Positions 3,606 through 62,674 of a stretch of 64,000 nt of DNA are shown piece after piece (position 1 is the first letter of the stretch; each line of letters opens with the position of its first letter). The position numbers were made by a program, and so were the translations under genes. Under the pieces are notes generated by a model, which was given only the letters and a program-made list of their open reading frames with translations, ran no database searches and was not told the DNA's origin. Location of the stretch: the IMG/VR virus record IMGVR_UViG_3300036770_006296, positions 142,618-206,617 of that record; one strand, 5' to 3'.

Positions 3606-3731
3606 AGTCAGGTGGCGGAATTGGTAGACGCATAAATAAAGGTTAACAGTAAGGATAACGTAGAGTAACCTTGAAATACCCATAAGTATAGCTCATAAGT
3701 TATCATACAGGTTCGAATCCTGTCCTGACTA
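3606..3731 (+). ncRNA. tRNA-like RNA with Leu-type acceptor/D/T arms and an expanded non-canonical anticodon region
   Basis: AGTCAGG/CCTGACT-A acceptor, GGCGGAATTGGTAGACGC D region, ACAGG-TTCGAAT-CCTGT T arm; ~75 nt insert with no canonical anticodon loop. Confidence 0.65.
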
Positions 3732-49935: not shown

Positions 49936-50598
49936 ATGAAGTTAGTATTTATATCCGATACTCATACCCTACATGACCGGTTTAATATACCAGATGGTGA
50001 TTTTATCATACACTGTGGTGACGTTTCAAGCAGAGGATATAGAAGTGAGGTCGAAAAATTTTTAGATTGGTATTGTGCTTTACCACATAAGCACAAGATT
50101 ATGATACCAGGAAATCATGATTTTTTCTTTGAAGAATACTACGAAGCTTCATCAAATTACTGCGAATCCAGAAACATACATTTACTGGTAGACAGTGGAA
50201 TAGAGTTAGAAGGCATTAAATTCTGGGGATCTCCTATAACACCATATTTTCATAATTGGGCTTTTAATAGATTCCGTGGATCATCCATTCAGCCACATTG
50301 GGATAAAATACCAGAGGGAGTTGATGTTCTTATTACACATGGTCCTCCTGCATATATGGAAAACGGATTATCTATGGTTCTTGAGGGTGAAGATGTTGGA
50401 TGTGAGGACCTTTATAAAGCAATTAAGAGGGTAAATCCTAAGATTAATGCTTTTGGACACATACATGAGGGATATGGTACGTACGATGATGGACAAACAA
50501 TTTTTATGAATTGTAGTTTACTAAACAGGAGATATTCGCCAGTTAATAAACCGATAGAAGTTTTATACGAGGATGGAAAATTTTCTCTCTATAAATAA
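49936..50598 (+). CDS. metallophosphoesterase (MPPED-like)
   Basis: ISDTH, HCGD, PGNHD, LITHGPP, FGHIHEG. Confidence 0.9.
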   Translation: MKLVFISDTHTLHDRFNIPDGDFIIHCGDVSSRGYRSEVEKFLDWYCALPHKHKIMIPGNHDFFFEEYYEASSNYCESRNIHLLVDSGIELEGIKFWGSPITPYFHNWAFNRFRGSSIQPHWDKIPEGVDVLITHGPPAYMENGLSMVLEGEDVGCEDLYKAIKRVNPKINAFGHIHEGYGTYDDGQTIFMNCSLLNRRYSPVNKPIEVLYEDGKFSLYK

Positions 50599-53154: not shown

Positions 53155-53475
53155 ATGAAAATTATTAATGATGAACAGCTAAACGAATCAATCAAAAGCG
53201 GAGAAAAAACTCTAGTTCTCTTTTCTGCAGACTGGTGTGGGCCATGTAAGATAATTAAACCAGCACTTGAAAAAGTAGAGGAGGAATTATCTAATTCTAT
53301 AAAAATAGTAAAAGCTGATGTGGGGGAGGCGGGAGAATCCGCAAAGAAATTTAACATAAAAAATATTCCTACTTGTGTACTTATAGAAGGCGAAACGGAG
53401 ATCGCTAGATTTTCTGGTGTAAAAAATGGGGATCAGATTAAAAAATTTCTAGAGGAACATCAGGTTTTAAATTGA
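53155..53475 (+). CDS. trxA: thioredoxin
   Basis: WCGPC active site, IPT. Confidence 0.93.
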   Translation: MKIINDEQLNESIKSGEKTLVLFSADWCGPCKIIKPALEKVEEELSNSIKIVKADVGEAGESAKKFNIKNIPTCVLIEGETEIARFSGVKNGDQIKKFLEEHQVLN

Positions 53476-53484
53476 AACTTTACC

Positions 53485-53524
53485 TATATTTGCGATATAT
53501 TTTAATAAAACGTTCTTTAACATA
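53485..53524 (+). promoter_or_regulatory. TATATTTG -7 box and boxA-like site upstream of ncRNA array
   Basis: TATATTTG 53485-53492; GTTCTTTAACATA 53512-53524. Confidence 0.6.
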
Positions 53525-53528
53525 CATA

Positions 53529-53745
53529 TTTTTCTTGAAGCGGTTTAAAGGGTTACTTCAAAATTTATAAACAGCGATCGATAAACAGCTCCGGCTGTTT
53601 ATTTCTAAAGACTTAGTACTTCTACAGAAGAGCGCTTCCTTAGGGGAGAAAATTACAGTAGATTGGTTTAATTCACTGACTAGAAATAAGGGAACGATTA
53701 CCTCACGTAATGAGGGACCACTCTTTAAAGATTTCTCAAGAAAAA
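53529..53745 (+). ncRNA. Y-RNA-like element 1 (long)
   Basis: ends pair (TTCTTGA/TCAAGAA; TTTAAAGGGT/ACTCTTTAAA); shared GAAGCGG...TACTTCA...TTCTC; upstream of Ro60. Confidence 0.6.
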
Positions 53746-53763
53746 AATTATATAAAAATAAAC

Positions 53764-53833
53764 TCCGAAGCGGTGAGAAGAGATACTTCAATAAGAAATC
53801 AAAAGAAAAAACCTCTTCCCTAATATTCTCGGA
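53764..53833 (+). ncRNA. Y-RNA-like element 2
   Basis: TCCGA/TCGGA closing stem, GAAGCGG, GAAGAG/CTCTTC, GATACTTCA. Confidence 0.6.
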
Positions 53834-53843
53834 TTTTTAGAAA

Positions 53844-53918
53844 TGTTCTGAAGCGGGATTTTGAGATACTTCATATATTGTTAGACTCGAAACCCTCGAA
53901 ATCAATTTTCTCAGAACA
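53844..53918 (+). ncRNA. Y-RNA-like element 3
   Basis: TGTTCTGA/TCAGAACA, GAAGCGG, GATTTTGAG/CTCGAAATC, GATACTTCA. Confidence 0.6.
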
Positions 53919-53924
53919 ACCACT

Positions 53925-53960
53925 AAGGGGTTTGGACGCTAAGCGACTGAACCCTTTTTT
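53925..53960 (+). terminator. terminator-like hairpin between ncRNA array and Ro60
   Basis: AAGGGGTTTGG...CTGAACCCTTT plus T tract. Confidence 0.5.
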
Positions 53961-53987
53961 ATTTTAGTAACTTTTTAAAACAACTAT

Positions 53988-55613
53988 ATGTCAAAGTTGA
54001 GTAATTACGCAGATAAAAAAGTAGCAATGCAAATTGCACATAATTCACTCTATGGAGCTTTTGCAGTGGAGAACTTTATGGGAGGAACATCCTATGAGAT
54101 CAATCCATTAGACACATTAAGGATTGTAGCGGCTTCCTCTATATTCGGAGAACCCCAATATTACCGTGACGGTTTAAAAGCACCTAGTAATCTTAGCACT
54201 CTTTCTAGATACTCTATATTTTCCTCGATGTATAAATCGGATTTAACATCGGTTGAAATTTTCGAAAATGCGATAGACTCTGCCCTTGACTATGACTTTA
54301 AAGGTACCCTAGATCTTGCTTTAGAATTAAGAAATAAATTCTTCATGAGACTTAATCCTGCGGTTATCTTCATAAGAGCATCGCAGCACAGTAACAGAAC
54401 AGAGTTTAATGAAGCTAACCCTGGATACATGAAAAATGTGGGTAAGTCTATCTCACTTAGACCTGATGATTTAACAAATCAATTTGAGTACTATATGTAC
54501 AAGAATGGGGGTAAAAAAGGCCTTTCGTCTTTAGTTAAAAGAACATGGGCAGAAAAACTTGGTGAATTTAGCAGATATCAATTAAATAAGTACAAAGGAA
54601 AAAGACTAATAGATCTTGTACGTATATCTCACGCAAAAGGAGAGGACATTAATGAGTTAATGTCCACCGGTACATTAAAAGTAAAAGAGACCGAAAAAAC
54701 CTGGGAAACTCTAAGATCTGAAGGAAAAACATGGAAGGAAATAGCGGATACAATTCTTATCCCTCATATGGCTTTATTAAGAAACCTTAGAGGTATATTT
54801 ACTGAGGTAGAAGATCGTACAATCACAGCGAGAATCTTAACTCAATTAAAATCTGGGGTTGAAAGTGGAAAACAATTTCCGTTTAGATATTGGTCAGCTT
54901 TTAAGGCGGTACAAAATTCAGATATACATCACAAGCAACTCGTTCTTGATACTCTAGAGGAGTGCTTAGATATTTCGGTAGCTAATATGCCTAAATTAAA
55001 GGGGAAAACTGCCTGTCTATCCGATAACTCAGGATCAGCATGGGGTTCTTTCAATAGCGAATATGGATCGGTAACTGTTGCAGAAATAGCTAACCTTTCA
55101 TCATTGACAACTGCTTTACAATCCGATGAAGGTATTGTAGGAGTATTTGGCGATAATCTTTCATTAAAAGAAGTCTCTAAAAGAAACGGTATACTCACTC
55201 AATTAGAAGAGACCTCTGAAAGAGGAAGATCTCAAGGAGGTGGAACGGAAAATGGGATATGGGTATTCTGGGACGAAGCTATAAAAAATAAAGTCCATTA
55301 CGATAACGTTTTTATCTACTCGGATATGCAGGCTGGACACGGCGGACTATATGGCCACAGCAATACAGTAGGAAGTTCTCCTTATGGACATAGCGGTAAA
55401 GGTGATGTCCATGTAGATGTACTGGCAATGGTACAAGAATACAGAAGAACTGTTAATCCCAAGGTTAATGTTTTTACTGTTCAAGTTGCAGGATACAACA
55501 ACACGGTTTTACCCGAAAATCTTTATAGAGGTGCTATATTAGCCGGATGGACAGGAAAAGAGCCACTATTTGCTAAAGCCATAATCGAAGCTTGGGATTC
55601 TATAGAATCTTAA
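53988..55613 (+). CDS. TROVE/Ro60 ribonucleoprotein (TROVE + vWA)
   Basis: NFMGG.SY, YQLNKYK, DLVRISH, TWE, MALLRNLR, QFPFRY..A, vWA DNSGS...YSDMQ. Confidence 0.92.
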   Translation: MSKLSNYADKKVAMQIAHNSLYGAFAVENFMGGTSYEINPLDTLRIVAASSIFGEPQYYRDGLKAPSNLSTLSRYSIFSSMYKSDLTSVEIFENAIDSALDYDFKGTLDLALELRNKFFMRLNPAVIFIRASQHSNRTEFNEANPGYMKNVGKSISLRPDDLTNQFEYYMYKNGGKKGLSSLVKRTWAEKLGEFSRYQLNKYKGKRLIDLVRISHAKGEDINELMSTGTLKVKETEKTWETLRSEGKTWKEIADTILIPHMALLRNLRGIFTEVEDRTITARILTQLKSGVESGKQFPFRYWSAFKAVQNSDIHHKQLVLDTLEECLDISVANMPKLKGKTACLSDNSGSAWGSFNSEYGSVTVAEIANLSSLTTALQSDEGIVGVFGDNLSLKEVSKRNGILTQLEETSERGRSQGGGTENGIWVFWDEAIKNKVHYDNVFIYSDMQAGHGGLYGHSNTVGSSPYGHSGKGDVHVDVLAMVQEYRRTVNPKVNVFTVQVAGYNNTVLPENLYRGAILAGWTGKEPLFAKAIIEAWDSIES

Positions 55614-55632
55614 TTTTTTTGCTATCTTTTTT

Positions 55633-55659
55633 AAAATCCCTAGCGATAGGGATTTTTTT
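55633..55659 (+). terminator. intrinsic terminator
   Basis: AAAATCCCTA-GCGA-TAGGGATTTT plus T tract. Confidence 0.8.
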
Positions 55660-58156: not shown

Positions 58157-58246
58157 GGAGAGGTGGCAGAGCCCGGTTTAATGCACCAGTCTTGAAAACT
58201 GACGTAGTGAAAGCTACCGGGGGTTCGAATCCCTCCCTCTCCGCCA
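58157..58246 (+). tRNA. tRNA-Ser(TGA)
   Basis: cloverleaf, long variable arm, CT-TGA-AA loop, encoded CCA. Confidence 0.95.
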
Positions 58247-58249
58247 TTT

Positions 58250-58323
58250 GGTCCGATAGCTCAGCTGGATAGAGCAACTGCCTTCTAAGCAGTAGGTCGC
58301 AGGTTCGAATCCTGCTCGGATCA
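58250..58323 (+). tRNA. tRNA-Arg(TCT)
   Basis: cloverleaf, CT-TCT-AA. Confidence 0.95.
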
Positions 58324-58329
58324 CTATAT

Positions 58330-58402
58330 CGGGATGTAGATCAGTTGGTAGATCGCCTGGTTTGGGACCGGGAGGTCCCAGGTTCGAGTCCTGATATCCC
58401 GA
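58330..58402 (+). tRNA. tRNA-Pro(TGG)
   Basis: cloverleaf, TT-TGG-GA. Confidence 0.93.
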
Positions 58403-58410
58403 CAGCTCTT

Positions 58411-58484
58411 AGAGGCGTAGCTCAATTGGTTAGAGCACATGCCTTATACGCATGCGGTCATGGGTTCGACTCCCATCGTCTCTA
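58411..58484 (+). tRNA. tRNA-Ile(TAT)
   Basis: CATGC-CT-TAT-AC-GCATG anticodon arm. Confidence 0.88.
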
Positions 58485-58488
58485 CTTA

Positions 58489-58562
58489 GGTCCCTTAGCT
58501 CAGTAGGTTAGAGCAACTGACTCATAATCAGTAGGTCCACGGTTCGAGCCCGTGAGGGACCA
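58489..58562 (+). tRNA. tRNA-Ile2(CAT) (lysidine type; elongator Met not excluded)
   Basis: GGTCCCTTAGCTCAG...CTCATAA; resembles ileX-type tRNAs. Confidence 0.85.
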
Positions 58563-58653
58563 CAAAGATACGGATGAGATTTCTAAATCTCCTACTTACT
58601 TATGAAAAGAAGGATTCCGTAACTAATACCATATAGTAGTGATGGTATTGCCT

Positions 58654-58737
58654 GCCCGGGTGATGGAATGGTAGACATGAGGGACTTAAAATCCCTTGGC
58701 CCTAAAGGCCGTGCGGGTTCGACTCCCGCCTCGGGTA
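58654..58737 (+). tRNA. tRNA-Leu(TAA)
   Basis: AGGGA-CT-TAA-AA-TCCCT, long variable arm. Confidence 0.95.
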
Positions 58738-58751
58738 CTGAATTAAAATAT

Positions 58752-59444
58752 ATGATAAAAGAATTAGAAGGATTTCAATGGGGCTGGATGGATCGGGGAA
58801 CAGATTCAGGAAACTACCACAAAGAAACCATGATAGGAGAAATATTCCTACAAAGAGCTTACGAAAGAATATTCGAAGTGGAACAAGGAGATATAGTTTT
58901 GGATGTCGGAGCTAGTGTAGGACCTTTTACAAGATCAATCTTAAGTAAAAACCCCAAACATGTTTTTTGTTTAGAGCCAAGTGTTTCTGAATTCAAATGC
59001 CTAGTTAAAAACACAATTGGATATCCAGTAACTCAAATAAACAAGGGAATTTGGGATTTTAATGGATCGGTAAATAGCGACCAACTATTCGGAGGGGAAG
59101 CACAAATGGAAACAATGACCTTTAGGACTTTCTTAGATCTTTTTGGTATTGATAGAATAGATTTTCTAAAAACTGATTGTGAAGGAGGTGAATATGAGAT
59201 ATTTAACTCAGAAAATCTGGATTTTATAAAATCAAATGTTCGTAAGGTGGTAGGTGAATGGCACTTGAGATCGCCAGGGAATAAAGATAAATTTAGAAAT
59301 TTCAGAGATACAGTTCTTCCATTATTTCAAAAGTACGAGGTTTATTCAATAGACGGGATTGATATAAAATGGGATCTATGGAATGAGCACTTCTTAGAAT
59401 ATTACGACGAGGTGATTCTTTATATAGATAACAGGAATATGTGA
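58752..59444 (+). CDS. FkbM family methyltransferase
   Basis: VLDVGASVG, LEP, IDFLKTDCEGGE; start moved out of tRNA-Leu. Confidence 0.85.
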   Translation: MIKELEGFQWGWMDRGTDSGNYHKETMIGEIFLQRAYERIFEVEQGDIVLDVGASVGPFTRSILSKNPKHVFCLEPSVSEFKCLVKNTIGYPVTQINKGIWDFNGSVNSDQLFGGEAQMETMTFRTFLDLFGIDRIDFLKTDCEGGEYEIFNSENLDFIKSNVRKVVGEWHLRSPGNKDKFRNFRDTVLPLFQKYEVYSIDGIDIKWDLWNEHFLEYYDEVILYIDNRNM

Positions 59445-61608: not shown

Positions 61609-61680
61609 GGTCGGTTCATCTAGGGGTCAGGATACAAGGTTTTCATCCTTGTCACACGGGTTCGAATCCCGTACCGACTA
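61609..61680 (+). tRNA. tRNA-Glu(TTC)
   Basis: CAAGG-TT-TTC-AT-CCTTG. Confidence 0.93.
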
Positions 61681-61766
61681 CTACAGCCTGTACCCTTGAG
61701 AAACTCGTATTTAAAGATAAGCAGGTTGGTTACGAAATAAAAGGGTAAGAGAATAAGTAACAAATT

Positions 61767-61840
61767 GGTCCTACAGTCCAGTTGGAGTGGACGCCGCCCT
61801 GTCACGGCGGAGATCGCGGGTTCGAGTCCCGCTAGGACCG
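61767..61840 (+). tRNA. tRNA-Asp(GTC)
   Basis: CCGCC-CT-GTC-AC-GGCGG. Confidence 0.93.
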
Positions 61841-61846
61841 CAATAT

Positions 61847-61919
<73 letters not shown>

Positions 61920-61990
61920 CTAAGCCCCCATTTCGTACCGTTACTGGATAATATAAATCTAAGTAACGTACGAAATGGAAATAATTTAAA

Positions 61991-62003
61991 GTTCTTTGAT
62001 ATA
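61991..62003 (+). promoter_or_regulatory. boxA-like site within cluster 2
   Basis: GTTCTTTGATATA after long hairpin 61928-61978. Confidence 0.5.
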
Positions 62004-62067
62004 CTTTATTACATCAATTTCAGATTTGGTAGTCTTTCTTGGATATATATACTAAAACGATTGTTTT

Positions 62068-62523
62068 ATGTATAGCAAAAATAAAATATCAGATATAATG
62101 ATAATAGAGGAGATAAAAACAGGAAATACGATGAATACCTGCGCTATTAATCTAGGTATTAAATTTTCGACGTTTAAAAGAAGAGCAATTTTACTTGGTG
62201 TTTATACTCCAAATCAAGGAAGAAAAGGAATTAAAAGAAATCCTAGTGAATTTAATAAAATTACAATATCTTTAGACGATATAATATCGGGGAAACATGA
62301 AGGACATTATACATCTTCAAGATTAAGAAAAAGATTAATTAAAGAAGGATATAAGAAAAATCAATGTGAAGAATGTAATATAAAAGAATGGAACGGGAAA
62401 GAGATAACATGTGAGCTACATCACATTGACGGAAATAGGGGTAATAACAGGTTGGAAAATTTATTAATACTCTGCCCTAATTGTCACTCTCAAACCCCTA
62501 ACCACTCAAAAAGAAATACCTAG
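62068..62523 (+). mobile_element. HNH endonuclease inserted in tRNA cluster
   Basis: CEEC...ELHHIDGNRGNNRLENLLILCPNCH; GATATATA at 62042. Confidence 0.88.
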
Positions 62524-62591
62524 GTACCCCAATTGGCAGAGGGAATAGATTTAGGATCTATAAAGTGAGGGTTCGAGTCCCTCCCTGGGTA
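62518..62591 (+). tRNA. tRNA-Leu(TAG) with short variable loop
   Basis: ACCTAGG/CCTGGGT-A, ATAGA-TT-TAG-GA-TCTAT, 5-nt variable loop. Confidence 0.85.
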
Positions 62592-62599
62592 CACCAAAA

Positions 62600-62673
62600 G
62601 GTCCCTTAGCTCAGTAGGTTAGAGCAACTGACTCATAATCAGTAGGTCCACGGTTCGAGCCCGTGAGGGACCA
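62600..62673 (+). tRNA. tRNA-Ile2(CAT), identical copy of 58489-58562
   Basis: exact duplicate sequence. Confidence 0.85.
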
Positions 62674-62674
62674 C

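What the first reader, a model, noticed from the sequence alone, without database searches (positions are those of the whole stretch)
53485..55659. Phage Ro60 (TROVE) preceded by three tandem Y-RNA-like elements
Three elements (53529-53745, 53764-53833, 53844-53918) share one fold: terminal stem, internal loop with AGCGG opposite AT(T/A)TTC-like sequence, second stem, then TACTTCA. Stem sequences differ between copies but still pair. Element 1 carries a ~160 nt insert domain. The array has its own promoter and boxA, and a terminator-like hairpin precedes the Ro60 gene. Established: bacterial Ro60 binds Y RNAs encoded nearby and is linked to RNA decay and repair. These copies lack an obvious tRNA-like T-arm, so they may be a distinct Y-RNA class or Ro-binding autoregulatory sites.
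Basis: partly seen in the sequence, partly recalled or inferred. Interest (0 to 1): 0.7.

Follow-up and report, generated by a model that had tools for sequence, protein, structure and literature searches.

The report
Phage Y RNA array beside Ro60
Three small structured RNAs encoded just upstream of a phage Ro60 gene belong to a conserved, previously uncatalogued phage branch of the bacterial YrlA-type Y RNAs (the RNA partners of Ro60), most of whose members lack the usual tRNA-like part.

Summary
Window 53529-53745, 53760-53837 and 53844-53918 (+) share one fold: closing stem P1, 5' loop AGCGG, stem P2, UACUUCA box, variable apex, 3' loop (A/G)AUUUC-like.

The downstream ORF (53988-55613) is a Ro60: Pfam TROVE, intact MIDAS motif, and an AlphaFold model whose 13 best PDB matches are all Ro60.

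The motif is a real RNA family. I found 81 distinct copies in 77 fetched stretches from large phages, including five upstream of Bacillus phage G gp540. All 14 modelled base pairs covary. Copies nearly always sit within a few kb of Ro60, on its strand.

The stem matches the Rfam YrlA stem in layout (P1, 5-nt loop, P2, 8-nt 3' loop) and in its CGAA-G sequence. Sibling copies in other phages carry a YrlA-type permuted tRNA-like core, or a whole tRNA-like domain, at the apex. Copies 2 and 3 here are therefore minimal, YrlB-like Y RNAs. Copy 1 carries a conserved, unclassified domain of about 160 nt.

A boxA-like leader and an intrinsic terminator flank the array and are both conserved. Metatranscriptome contigs from five studies cover the array but not the flanking genes.

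Ro60 binding itself is inferred, not shown. I rate this a new variant of a known kind, of moderate interest.

The parts
53472..53501 (+). Promoter-like site (TTGAAA, 18 nt, TATATT). An overlapping, better-conserved TATATTTG at 53485-53492 could instead be a Bacteroidota-type -7 box.
   Evidence: Consensus scan. TTGAAAC and TAtATTTGC are conserved in 9 of 11 related loci. Which box is actually used is not settled.
53511..53522 (+). boxA-like leader CGUUCUUUAACA. It resembles the rrn boxA UGCUCUUUAACA (consensus recalled from my own knowledge).
   Evidence: CGTTCTTTAA is invariant in 11 loci even where the flanks have diverged. It is the only exact match in the window.
53529..53745 (+). Y RNA copy 1 (217 nt): P1 53529-53538/53736-53745; AGCGG 53539-53543; P2 53544-53553/53720-53729; UACUUCA 53554-53560; conserved apical domain 53561-53719; 3' loop 53730-53735.
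   Evidence: Fold energy -50.5 kcal/mol, z = -2.2. The apical domain is shared with 16 other loci. RNA-library contigs from 4 studies cover only 53545-53726.
53760..53837 (+). Y RNA copy 2, minimal form (core 53764-53833): AGCGG 53769-53773, UACUUCA 53784-53790, A-rich apex.
   Evidence: Covariance model R1 scores it 75.9 bits, E = 1e-15. The RNA-library contig X17 spans 53756-53928.
53844..53918 (+). Y RNA copy 3, minimal form: AGCGG 53852-53856, UACUUCA 53867-53873.
   Evidence: R1 scores it 69 bits, E = 5e-14. Fold z = -3.0. Covered by the X17 contig.
53925..53966 (+). Intrinsic-terminator-like hairpin (53925-53957) followed by a U run, lying between the array and the Ro60 start codon.
   Evidence: Energy -16 kcal/mol, z = -3.3. 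The hairpin plus U run is kept with compensatory changes in 12 of 13 related loci.
53988..55613 (+). Ro60 (TROVE plus von Willebrand A domain) gene, 541 aa.
   Evidence: Pfam TROVE 32.3 bits against a cut-off of 23. PHROG 850 RNA-binding protein, E = 1.8e-43. AlphaFold2 model with pLDDT 78.5. The top 13 Foldseek PDB matches are all Ro60, led by 9KOP at E = 1.9e-15. The MIDAS residues D346, S348, S350, T420 and D446 are invariant.
55633..55656 (+). Terminator-like hairpin after the Ro60 gene.
   Evidence: Consensus scan: 10-bp stem followed by a U run.

Best explanation
The three elements are phage-encoded Y RNAs, the noncoding partners of Ro60. They belong to a phage-specific branch of the YrlA/YrlB family.

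Proposed mechanism:
1. They are transcribed as one untranslated operon from a conserved promoter with a boxA-like leader. That leader is inferred to protect the untranslated transcript from premature termination, as in rRNA operons.
2. Transcription mostly ends at the conserved terminator about 30 nt before the Ro60 start codon. The RNAs would then outnumber the Ro60 mRNA, which would be made by read-through.
3. Each RNA folds into P1, an asymmetric internal loop (5' AGCGG opposite 3' WAUAUUC), and a 10-nt P2 strand followed by the UACUUCA box.
4. Ro60 is inferred to bind this module through the 5' strand (Y-G-A-A-G-C-G-G). This is the counterpart of the GNCGAA(N)G motif of bacterial Y RNAs and of GGUCCGA in animal Y RNAs.
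5. The UACUUC box, fixed one helical turn away, is inferred to be a second contact on the same face of the helix.
6. The apex is the exchangeable effector module. It is almost absent in copies 2 and 3 (YrlB-like). In copy 1 it is a conserved domain of about 160 nt. In sibling copies of other phages it is tRNA-like.
7. By analogy with Deinococcus, Salmonella and Thermus phage phiLo, the particles would gate Ro60 and tether it to host enzymes such as PNPase. The target would be structured RNA, probably tRNA, because the locus sits in the phage's tRNA-gene region.

Shown here: the fold, covariation, linkage to Ro60, architectural match to YrlA, the Ro60 fold of the protein, and presence of the RNAs in RNA libraries.

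Inferred: Ro60 binding, processing, antitermination, the partner enzymes and the biological role.
For: Family and structure:
- The motif occurs 3 times in the window against 0.06 expected.
- Five copies lie in the 1-kb gap upstream of phage G gp540, whose Ro60 is 52% identical.
- Model R1 found 116 hits at E<=1 in 418 kb from 50 sources, all on the Ro60 strand, just upstream or downstream of the gene.
- On 55 copies, 14 of 14 pairs covary and 88.9% of cells are paired against 34-48% in slid controls; 0 of 500 shuffles reach the covariation score. An independent MAFFT/RNAalifold alignment gives 13 of 14 pairs with compensatory changes.

Linkage to Ro60:
- Whole-genome scans of six phage records (155-497 kb) gave hits only within about 5 kb of Ro60.
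- In the reverse test, starting from the RNA pattern, 30 of 65 viral stretches hold Ro60 in the stretch, always on the same strand. Eight more lie on contigs known to hold Ro60.

Relation to YrlA:
- The Rfam YrlA consensus has P1 (6 bp), a 5-nt loop, P2 (7 bp) and an 8-nt 3' loop, with 5' sequence cggCgaAUGCu.
- A YrlA-type permuted tRNA-like core sits inside the AGCGG/UACUUC stem in phage G (36 bits; sequence) and in three copies of L133.
- tRNA-like domains are nested in the stems in L031, L033 and L035.
- Copies in L031, L033 and L035 read GGCGAAG, a full match to the published GNCGAA(N0-1)G motif (PMC4201824).

Other support:
- The spacing from AGCGG to UACUUC is 10 nt in 57 of 64 copies.
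- The protein is a Ro60.
- The leader and the terminator are conserved.
- RNA-library contigs cover 53545-53726 in four studies at depth 3.6-29, with zero depth on 5.7 kb of flanks and adapter letters directly at the ends. A fifth study covers 53756-53928.
- Precedent: Thermus phage phiLo Ro60 binds two upstream Y-like RNAs and assembles with host PNPase (PMC12135203).
Against: - No binding data exist, and the complex-prediction tool does not fold RNA-protein pairs.
- Rfam YrlA and Y_RNA do not match the window copies even at E<=10. The best sibling match is 36 bits against a gathering score of 69.
- Two of the three window copies read UGAAG rather than the canonical CGAAG.
- Fifteen further stretches with model-confirmed copies show no Ro60 in the stretch held. 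Four of those contigs were checked in full (39-54 kb, 13-19% complete): they lack Ro60 and carry the motif inside tRNA arrays.
- One copy, in L063, lies on the strand opposite to Ro60.
- The RNA-library contigs over copy 1 lack P1 and AGCGG. The abundant species may therefore be a processed apex that could not bind Ro60 through the stem.
- Contigs from RNA libraries are not proof of transcription.
Confidence: 0.75

Rival explanations
1. The elements are a cis-acting leader. Ro60 would bind them in its own 5' UTR to control read-through of the terminator or translation, as autoregulation, and they would not act as free RNAs.
For: In the window clade the array lies between the only evident promoter and the Ro60 ATG. 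The terminator sits 30 nt before the ATG, with no room for a separate promoter. A boxA-like leader could make read-through adjustable.
Against: In the clade with 49-57% identical Ro60, the arrays lie downstream of the gene (L031, L033, L035, L036, L037, L047). In phage G, further copies lie 2 kb upstream behind another gene and 3.7 kb downstream. In other phages the copies sit inside tRNA arrays. RNA-library contigs cover the elements but not the Ro60 coding region in four runs. Sibling copies carry tRNA-like effector domains typical of trans-acting Y RNAs. The two roles are not mutually exclusive.
Confidence: 0.1
2. The elements are an RNA of phage tRNA arrays that works without Ro60. Examples would be a processing scaffold, or a decoy for host tRNA-directed nucleases or tRNA enzymes. 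Under this view the linkage to Ro60 only reflects that Ro60 also sits in the tRNA region.
For: Copies are embedded between tRNA genes with 0-5 nt spacers on contigs with no Ro60 (L073, L120, L133). Ro60 loci are usually flanked by tRNA genes. Some apices are whole tRNA-like domains. The abundant RNA species over copy 1 lacks the presumed Ro60-binding stem.
Against: The two tRNA arrays in the window (58157-58738 and 61609-62674) and the rest of the 206-kb record carry no copy; all three copies abut Ro60. In six phage records every hit is within about 5 kb of Ro60. The Ro60-less contigs are 13-19% complete fragments. The stem matches the Ro60-binding module of YrlA in layout and sequence.
Confidence: 0.1
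3. The similarity is chance or has a trivial cause, such as repeated terminator-like hairpins or recently duplicated spacer DNA. No functional RNA would be involved.
For: The genome is AT-rich, and copy 2 alone folds no better than shuffles of itself (z = -0.17).
Against: Only 0.06 matches are expected by chance against 3 found. There are 81 distinct copies in 77 fetched stretches, with invariant loops and freely covarying stems. The copies are conserved down to 24-39% Ro60 identity.
Confidence: 0.01

Closest known systems
YrlA (Rfam RF02553), the tRNA-like Y RNA of bacteria and some phages (Chen et al. 2014, PMC4201824)
   Same: - Encoded within a few kb of Ro60 on the same strand.
- The 5' and 3' ends form P1, then a 5-nt 5' loop, P2, and a longer A/U-rich 3' loop.
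- The 5' strand carries CGAA-G.
- The apex is an exchangeable module.
- Sibling copies in phage G and L133 carry the YrlA-type permuted T-arm / acceptor-like / D-arm core.
   Different: - The loop reads AGCGG rather than AUGCu.
- There is an invariant UACUUC box 10 nt downstream.
- Most copies (49 of 81), including window copies 2 and 3, have no tRNA-like domain.
- The Rfam model does not reach its threshold: no hit in the window, and 36 bits against 69 in phage G.
- The copies occur as tandem arrays of up to five or six.
YrlB (Salmonella, M. smegmatis) and Yrn2 (D. radiodurans): second, shorter Y RNAs bound by Rsr
   Same: They are short hairpin Y RNAs encoded beside YrlA and Ro60. They carry the GNCGAA(N)G motif and a small pyrimidine-rich loop, and lack a full tRNA-like domain (PMC4201824). 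Window copies 2 and 3 are 75-78 nt with the pyrimidine-rich UACUUCA box at the apex.
   Different: YrlB has no detectable sequence family outside Salmonella enterica serovars (PMC4201824). Here the minimal form is a conserved family across dozens of phages, and it shares its stem with the tRNA-like form.
Thermus phage phiLo Ro60 with Yrl1 and Yrl2 (PMC12135203; PDB 9KOP, 9L5Y)
   Same: A phage Ro60 is preceded by tandem Y-like RNAs with a CGAA motif in a stem / bulge / stem fold. The protein is the best structural match to the window's Ro60 (TM 0.65/0.75). Binding and assembly with host PNPase were shown there.
   Different: The proteins are only 22% identical. I did not compare the phiLo RNA sequences. 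Here there are three copies, a boxA-like leader, a terminator, and a large novel apex on copy 1.
Animal Y RNAs (Rfam RF00019)
   Same: They are Ro60-bound stem / loop RNAs. Ro60 reads mainly the 5' strand of the terminal stem (GGUCCGA), and the distal loop binds other proteins.
   Different: There is no detectable sequence similarity. Animal Y RNAs are made by RNA polymerase III as single genes and have a bulged-C helix.
boxA antitermination leader of rRNA operons (bound by NusB and NusE)
   Same: A 12-nt element matches UGCUCUUUAACA at 10 of 12 positions. It lies just after the promoter of an untranslated structured-RNA operon and is strictly conserved.
   Different: It is found on a phage small-RNA operon. 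Binding of Nus factors is untested. It is absent upstream of the phage G array.

Membership tests
Y RNA (bacterial YrlA/YrlB type) | Encoded near a Ro60 gene (within about 4 kb), on the same strand | tested here: met
   The copies end 70-460 nt before the Ro60 ATG on the + strand. The same holds for 116 of 116 hits in 50 sources and for six whole phage records. Exceptions are one opposite-strand copy and four contig fragments without Ro60.
Y RNA (bacterial YrlA/YrlB type) | Long stem formed by pairing of the 5' and 3' ends, interrupted by an internal loop, with a variable distal module | tested here: met
   P1 and P2 covary in 14 of 14 pairs. The layout matches the Rfam YrlA consensus structure.
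Y RNA (bacterial YrlA/YrlB type) | 5'-strand motif GNCGAA(N0-1)G, the presumed Ro60 contact | tested here: inconclusive
   Copy 2 reads CCGAAG, while copies 1 and 3 read UGAAG. Family-wide, the stem closes with CGA in 23 of 64 copies and UGA in 34 of 64. A full GGCGAAG occurs in copies of L031, L033 and L035.
YrlA (RF02553) | tRNA-like domain (T arm, acceptor-like stem, D arm) at the apex | tested here: not met
   There is no tRNA or YrlA match in 53400-54050 at E<=10 and no ARAGORN call. The feature is met only in sibling copies of other phages. The window copies are therefore not YrlA proper.
YrlA (RF02553) | Score at or above the Rfam gathering threshold (69 bits) | tested here: not met
   No hit in the finding's region. 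In the phage's own record the only weak hits fall on tRNA genes. The phage G sibling scores 36.2 bits.
Y RNA (any) | Physically bound by Ro60 | not testable with these tools
   The complex-prediction tool does not fold RNA-protein jobs. This needs EMSA or RIP.
Y RNA (any) | Accumulates as a discrete small RNA | tested here: inconclusive
   Contigs from RNA libraries of five studies cover only the copies, not the flanks. Adapter-defined ends lie at 53545 or 53551/2 and at 53687-53690. These are assembled contigs, strand is not resolved, and the species seen lacks P1.
Ro60 / TROVE protein | TROVE (HEAT-repeat ring) domain followed by a von Willebrand A domain with a MIDAS motif | tested here: met
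   Pfam TROVE scores above its cut-off. The model is helical over residues 88-332 and alpha/beta over 337-540. All 13 top PDB matches are Ro60, and the next matches are vWA domains. DxSxS, T and D of the MIDAS motif are invariant. A plain sequence search of the PDB found nothing.
boxA antitermination element | Match to the boxA consensus, placed in the leader of an untranslated RNA operon and conserved | tested here: met
   CGTTCTTTAACA lies at 53511-53522, and its core is invariant in 11 loci.
boxA antitermination element | Binding of NusB/NusE and read-through of terminators | not testable with these tools
   No computation is available. The host is unknown.

The most novel reading that the evidence does not exclude
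The AGCGG loop and the UACUUC box, fixed one helical turn apart, may form a bipartite recognition code that differs from the code of known Y RNAs.

The conserved apex of copy 1, about 150 nt, may be a new structured RNA class. It appears to be cut out of its Y-RNA stem, and it is the species that accumulates in freshwater metatranscriptomes. It could therefore act on its own.

Together with the motif copies embedded in tRNA arrays of contigs that lack Ro60, this would make the family a phage tRNA-array RNA system that uses Ro60 only in part. One possible role is to protect or renew the tRNA pool against host tRNA-directed defences.
Probability: 0.15. Interest if true: 0.75.

Novelty: new variant of a known kind. 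Interest (0 to 1): 0.55.

Why it matters
Ro60 with its Y RNAs is a conserved RNA-surveillance particle, and the human version is a lupus autoantigen. What Ro60 recognises in bacterial Y RNAs is known only as one short 5'-strand motif.

This family supplies more than 80 natural variants of a compact binding module of about 70 nt. It has two invariant single-stranded elements at a fixed spacing and freely covarying stems. That makes it a ready substrate for binding, mutational and structural work.

It also shows that one Ro60-binding stem can carry interchangeable heads: none, tRNA-like, a permuted tRNA-like core, or a new 160-nt domain. This is direct comparative support for the modular tether model of Y RNAs.

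One member, Bacillus phage G, is cultivable, so the predictions can be tested.

For annotation, the family is missing from Rfam. Some of its nested tRNA-like domains are called as tRNAs, including apparent suppressor tRNAs, by standard tools.

Tried and rejected
- **Rfam:** gathering thresholds on the whole window gave only tRNAs. A lax scan of 53400-54050 gave no Y_RNA, YrlA or tRNA hit.
- **blastn against phage genomes:** no match for the locus.
- **Sequence search of the PDB with the protein:** nothing at E<=0.01. The Ro60 identity needed a fold search instead.
- **Complex prediction with Ro60 plus copy 3 RNA:** the tool did not fold it and gives no verdict for RNA. This is no evidence either way.
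- **First structure job:** I repeated it without them.
- **Alternative pairing of UGAAG (end of P1 plus loop) with CUUCA (box):** rejected. The base before GAAG and the base after CUUC do not covary.
- **tRNA-like reading of the copy 1 apex:** GGUUUAAUUCAC looks like a T loop, but no stem or covariation supports it and no model matches.
- **Full consensus structure of the copy 1 apex:** only a few hairpins are supported.
- **RtcB in the phage's own record:** absent, in a record that is 81% complete. No link to an RtcB repair operon could be made.
- **Neighbouring ORFs:** a metallophosphoesterase, a thioredoxin and an FkbM-type methyltransferase, otherwise no family matches. None is informative for the mechanism.
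- **Literature:** no paper found describes this motif. A 2023 catalogue of 10,006 unnamed viral RNA candidates (PMC10690425) mentions neither Ro60 nor TROVE. Whether it lists this motif under a number could not be checked. The supplementary tables of Chen et al. 2014, which may list the phage G YrlA-type copy, are not held.
Full report
**1. What is in the sequence.**
Each element has:
- a closing stem P1;
- a 5-nt 5' loop, AGCGG;
- a second stem P2;
- the heptamer UACUUCA;
- a variable apex;
- the return strand of P2;
- a 6-nt 3' loop (GAUUUC, AUAUUC or AUUUUC);
- the return strand of P1.

The P1 and P2 sequences differ between copies but still pair. Copy 1 (53529-53745) has a 159-nt apex. Copies 2 (53760-53837) and 3 (53844-53918) have short A-rich apices.

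The pattern AGCGG-N(5-14)-TACTTCA occurs three times in the window, against 0.06 expected from shuffles. It occurs nowhere else in the 206.6-kb virus record to which the window belongs.

**2. The protein.**
- Pfam finds a TROVE domain above its cut-off, but only over residues 236-316. PHROGs gives 'RNA-binding protein' at E = 1.8e-43. A sequence search of the PDB finds nothing.
- An AlphaFold2 model built on 31 homologues has pLDDT 78.5 and pTM 0.74.
- Its 13 best PDB matches are all Ro60: Thermus phage phiLo 9KOP at E = 1.9e-15 and TM 0.65/0.75, D. radiodurans Rsr, and Xenopus and human Ro60. The next matches are von Willebrand A domains.
- The MIDAS residues (D346-x-S348-x-S350, T420, D446) are invariant across the family.

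The gene is therefore a divergent but complete Ro60.

**3. The motif is a family linked to this Ro60 clade.**
- The closest cultured relative is Bacillus phage G gp540, at 52% identity. The 1-kb gap upstream of gp540 holds five copies of the same motif.
- IMG/VR supplied 48 loci with Ro60 relatives. A covariance model (R1) built from 28 short copies found 116 hits at E<=1 in 418 kb. All are on the Ro60 strand. They lie either within about 500 nt upstream of the gene (relatives with at least 62% identity) or just downstream of it (the clade with 49-57% identity).
- On 55 high-scoring copies, both helices covary at every one of the 14 modelled pairs. 88.9% of cells are paired, against 34-48% when the partners are slid. 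There are 248 compensatory cells, and no shuffle out of 500 reaches the covariation score.
- Because that alignment was fitted to the model, I also note the independent MAFFT/RNAalifold result: 13 of 14 pairs show compensatory changes.
- Whole-record scans of phage G (497 kb), four IMG/VR records (155-386 kb) and the window's own record gave hits only within about 5 kb of Ro60.
- Contigs binned with bacterial MAGs that carry this Ro60 also carry the motif.

**4. The reverse test.**
I started from the RNA rather than the protein. A fixed 16-base pattern of the motif matched 65 viral stretches.
- 30 stretches hold a Ro60 within the stretch, always on the motif's strand, including Ro60s only 24-39% identical to the window's.
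- 8 more lie on contigs already known, or shown, to hold Ro60.
- 15 more have model-confirmed copies but no Ro60 in the stretch held.
- The remaining 12 have no model hit at E<=0.01. I take most of them for chance pattern matches, but I did not inspect them one by one.

Four of the Ro60-less contigs were checked in full. They are 39-54 kb, only 13-19% complete, and have no Ro60. In them the copies sit inside tRNA gene arrays, between tRNA genes. The linkage to Ro60 is therefore strong but not absolute in the data available. The tRNA-array context is a second constant feature.

**5. Why these are Y RNAs.**
- *Architecture.* The Rfam YrlA consensus, seen on Caulobacter phage CcrColossus, is P1 (6 bp), a 5-nt 5' loop, P2 (7 bp), a junction to a tRNA-like core, the return of P2, an 8-nt A/U-rich 3' loop, and the return of P1. 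Its 5' sequence is cggCgaAUGCu. The present motif has the same order and the same asymmetry. It reads Y-G-A-AGCGG on the 5' strand and WAUAUUC-UCR on the 3' strand.
- *The published motif.* Chen et al. (PMC4201824) defined GNCGAA(N0-1)G near the 5' end as the likely Ro60 contact of bacterial Y RNAs. Copies in L031, L033 and L035 read GGCGAAG. Window copy 2 reads CCGAAG, and copies 1 and 3 read UGAAG.
- *Nested tRNA-like cores.* In phage G a further copy lies 2 kb upstream of gp540 (L001:723-878). It has the same AGCGG/UACUUCG stem and carries at its apex a T arm, an acceptor-like stem and a D arm in the permuted order typical of YrlA. It gives the only YrlA hit, at 36 bits, below the gathering score of 69. 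Three copies in L133 have the same build.
- *Whole tRNA-like domains.* In L031, L033 and L035 the apex is a tRNA-like domain in normal order. ARAGORN calls these tRNA-Lys(UUU), a 73-nt tRNA-Ser(GCU) or a 'stop' (UUA) tRNA.

Among 81 distinct validated copies in 77 fetched stretches (some stretches overlap on the same contig):
- 49 are minimal (100 nt or less);
- 13 carry a T loop;
- 11 carry the copy-1-type domain;
- 8 carry other inserts.

The family is thus one Ro60-type stem with exchangeable heads. Window copies 2 and 3 correspond to the short, pyrimidine-loop Y RNAs (YrlB, Yrn2) that accompany YrlA in bacteria (PMC4201824).

**6. Features specific to this family.**
- AGCGG is nearly invariant: 58 of 64 copies, with UGCGG in the other 6.
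- UACUUC is followed by A (50), G (9) or U (5).
- The distance between the two is 10 nt in 57 of 64 copies. That is about one helical turn, so the two single-stranded elements face the same side of P2. This suggests, by inference only, a single protein reading both.
- A possible alternative pairing of UGAAG with CUUCA is not supported by covariation.

**7. The operon frame.**
- A promoter-like site lies at 53472-53501.
- It is followed by CGUUCUUUAACA at 53511-53522. Its core is invariant in 11 loci whose surroundings have diverged, and it is unique in the window. By my own recollection of the consensus, it matches the rrn boxA at 10 of 12 positions.
- After copy 3 comes a hairpin (53925-53957) with a U run, z = -3.3. 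It is kept with compensatory changes in 12 of 13 relatives and ends only about 30 nt before the Ro60 ATG.
- No Shine-Dalgarno sequence is visible before that ATG.

The simplest reading is an untranslated RNA operon with an antitermination-type leader. Ro60 would be expressed by read-through of the terminator. This part is inference.

**8. Expression.**
The phage occurs in freshwater, estuarine, drinking-water and subsurface metagenomes. About twenty metatranscriptome runs hold a fifth to a third of the array's words.
- In four runs from four studies, contigs cover only 53545-53726, inside copy 1. Depths are 3.6-29, with zero depth on 5.7 kb of flanking genes including Ro60.
- Adapter letters abut position 53545 or 53552, and positions 53687-53690. 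Three studies share the start at 53551/53552.
- A fifth study has a contig over 53756-53928, which is copies 2 and 3.
- Loose ends in these runs show diverged versions of the copy 1 apex, presumably from relatives.

This argues for abundant, short RNA species and against DNA carry-over. However, these are assembled contigs without strand information. The species seen over copy 1 lacks P1 and AGCGG, and I cannot explain that.

**9. The apex of copy 1.**
It is shared by 17 loci, with strongly conserved blocks and a covarying hairpin with a CGUAA loop. It matches no Rfam family and no tRNA model. I could not derive a full structure for it.

**10. Verdict.**
The elements are best described as a phage-specific variant of the YrlA/YrlB family. 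They form a tandem array, are mostly without a tRNA-like domain, and have their own invariant loop and box.

Phage Ro60 genes with adjacent Y-like RNAs are already known (PMC4201824, PMC12135203), so the kind is not new. The family, its bipartite motif, its modular heads and the copy 1 domain appear undescribed: they are absent from Rfam 15 and from the papers I could search.

Binding to Ro60, processing and biological role remain to be shown.

Noticed in passing
window 3606-3731 (+): The tRNA model hits at 40.6 bits, with 64 nt where the top of the anticodon arm (11 nt) should be. ARAGORN does not call it. It could be an intron-bearing tRNA or a tRNA-like RNA with a long arm.
   Followed up: partly
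window 58157-58738 and 61609-62674 (+): Two tRNA arrays with 11 genes in all lie downstream of Ro60. The tRNA-Met(CAU) genes at 58489-58563 and 62600-62674 are identical. None of these tRNAs is flanked by the Y-RNA stem.
   Followed up: partly
L031 4647-4719 and 4788-4856; L033 4745-4817 and 4992-5063; L035 1826-1898 and 1954-2029: ARAGORN calls tRNAs here (Lys-UUU, Thr-GGU, a 73-nt Ser-GCU, 'Stop'-UUA), but they lie nested inside Y-RNA stems directly after the UACUUC box. Standard annotation would list them as tRNAs, including apparent suppressor tRNAs.
   Followed up: partly
L073 5537-5616 (-), L120 7172-7250 (-), L133 3230-4085 (-), L100: Copies of the motif are embedded in tRNA gene arrays, with spacers of only 0-5 nt to the neighbouring tRNAs. 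These contig fragments (39-54 kb, 13-19% complete) hold no Ro60.
   Followed up: partly
L063 4689-4790 (-): One copy has the box variant UACAUCG and a T arm at its apex. It lies on the strand opposite to Ro60, convergent with the gene. It is the only strand exception seen.
   Followed up: partly
window 53545-53726: RNA-library contigs from three studies begin at 53551/53552, inside the 5' strand of P2. They end near 53687-53690 with adapter letters attached. One contig has four extra letters, GCGG, before the adapter. This could be a processed apex, a reverse-transcription stop or an artefact.
   Followed up: no
Phage G record NC_023719: 405193-405348 and 412774-412840: Besides the five copies upstream of gp540, phage G has a YrlA-type copy between gp538 and gp539 and one more copy 3.7 kb downstream, in the tRNA region. 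None of these is annotated in the stretch of the record I fetched (404471-412030), which covers the first six copies; the copy at 412774-412840 lies outside it and its annotation was not checked.
   Followed up: partly
window 53485-53492 and 53975-53990; L060: There are three weak hints of a Bacteroidota host. TATATTTG fits the -7 box TAnnTTTG. No Shine-Dalgarno sequence precedes the Ro60 ATG. A Ro60 77% identical lies on a 27.9-kb contig binned with a Crocinitomicaceae MAG.
   Followed up: no
window 53558-53791 (-): A 77-codon ORF with a TTG start overlaps copies 1 and 2 on the opposite strand. The conservation pattern there is that of RNA stems, so the ORF is most likely spurious.
   Followed up: no
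window 49936-50598, 53155-53475, 58668-59444: The neighbouring genes are a calcineurin-like metallophosphoesterase, a thioredoxin and an FkbM-type methyltransferase. The methyltransferase ORF overlaps the end of tRNA-Leu, so its true start is probably later. No RtcB was found in the 206-kb record.
   Followed up: partly
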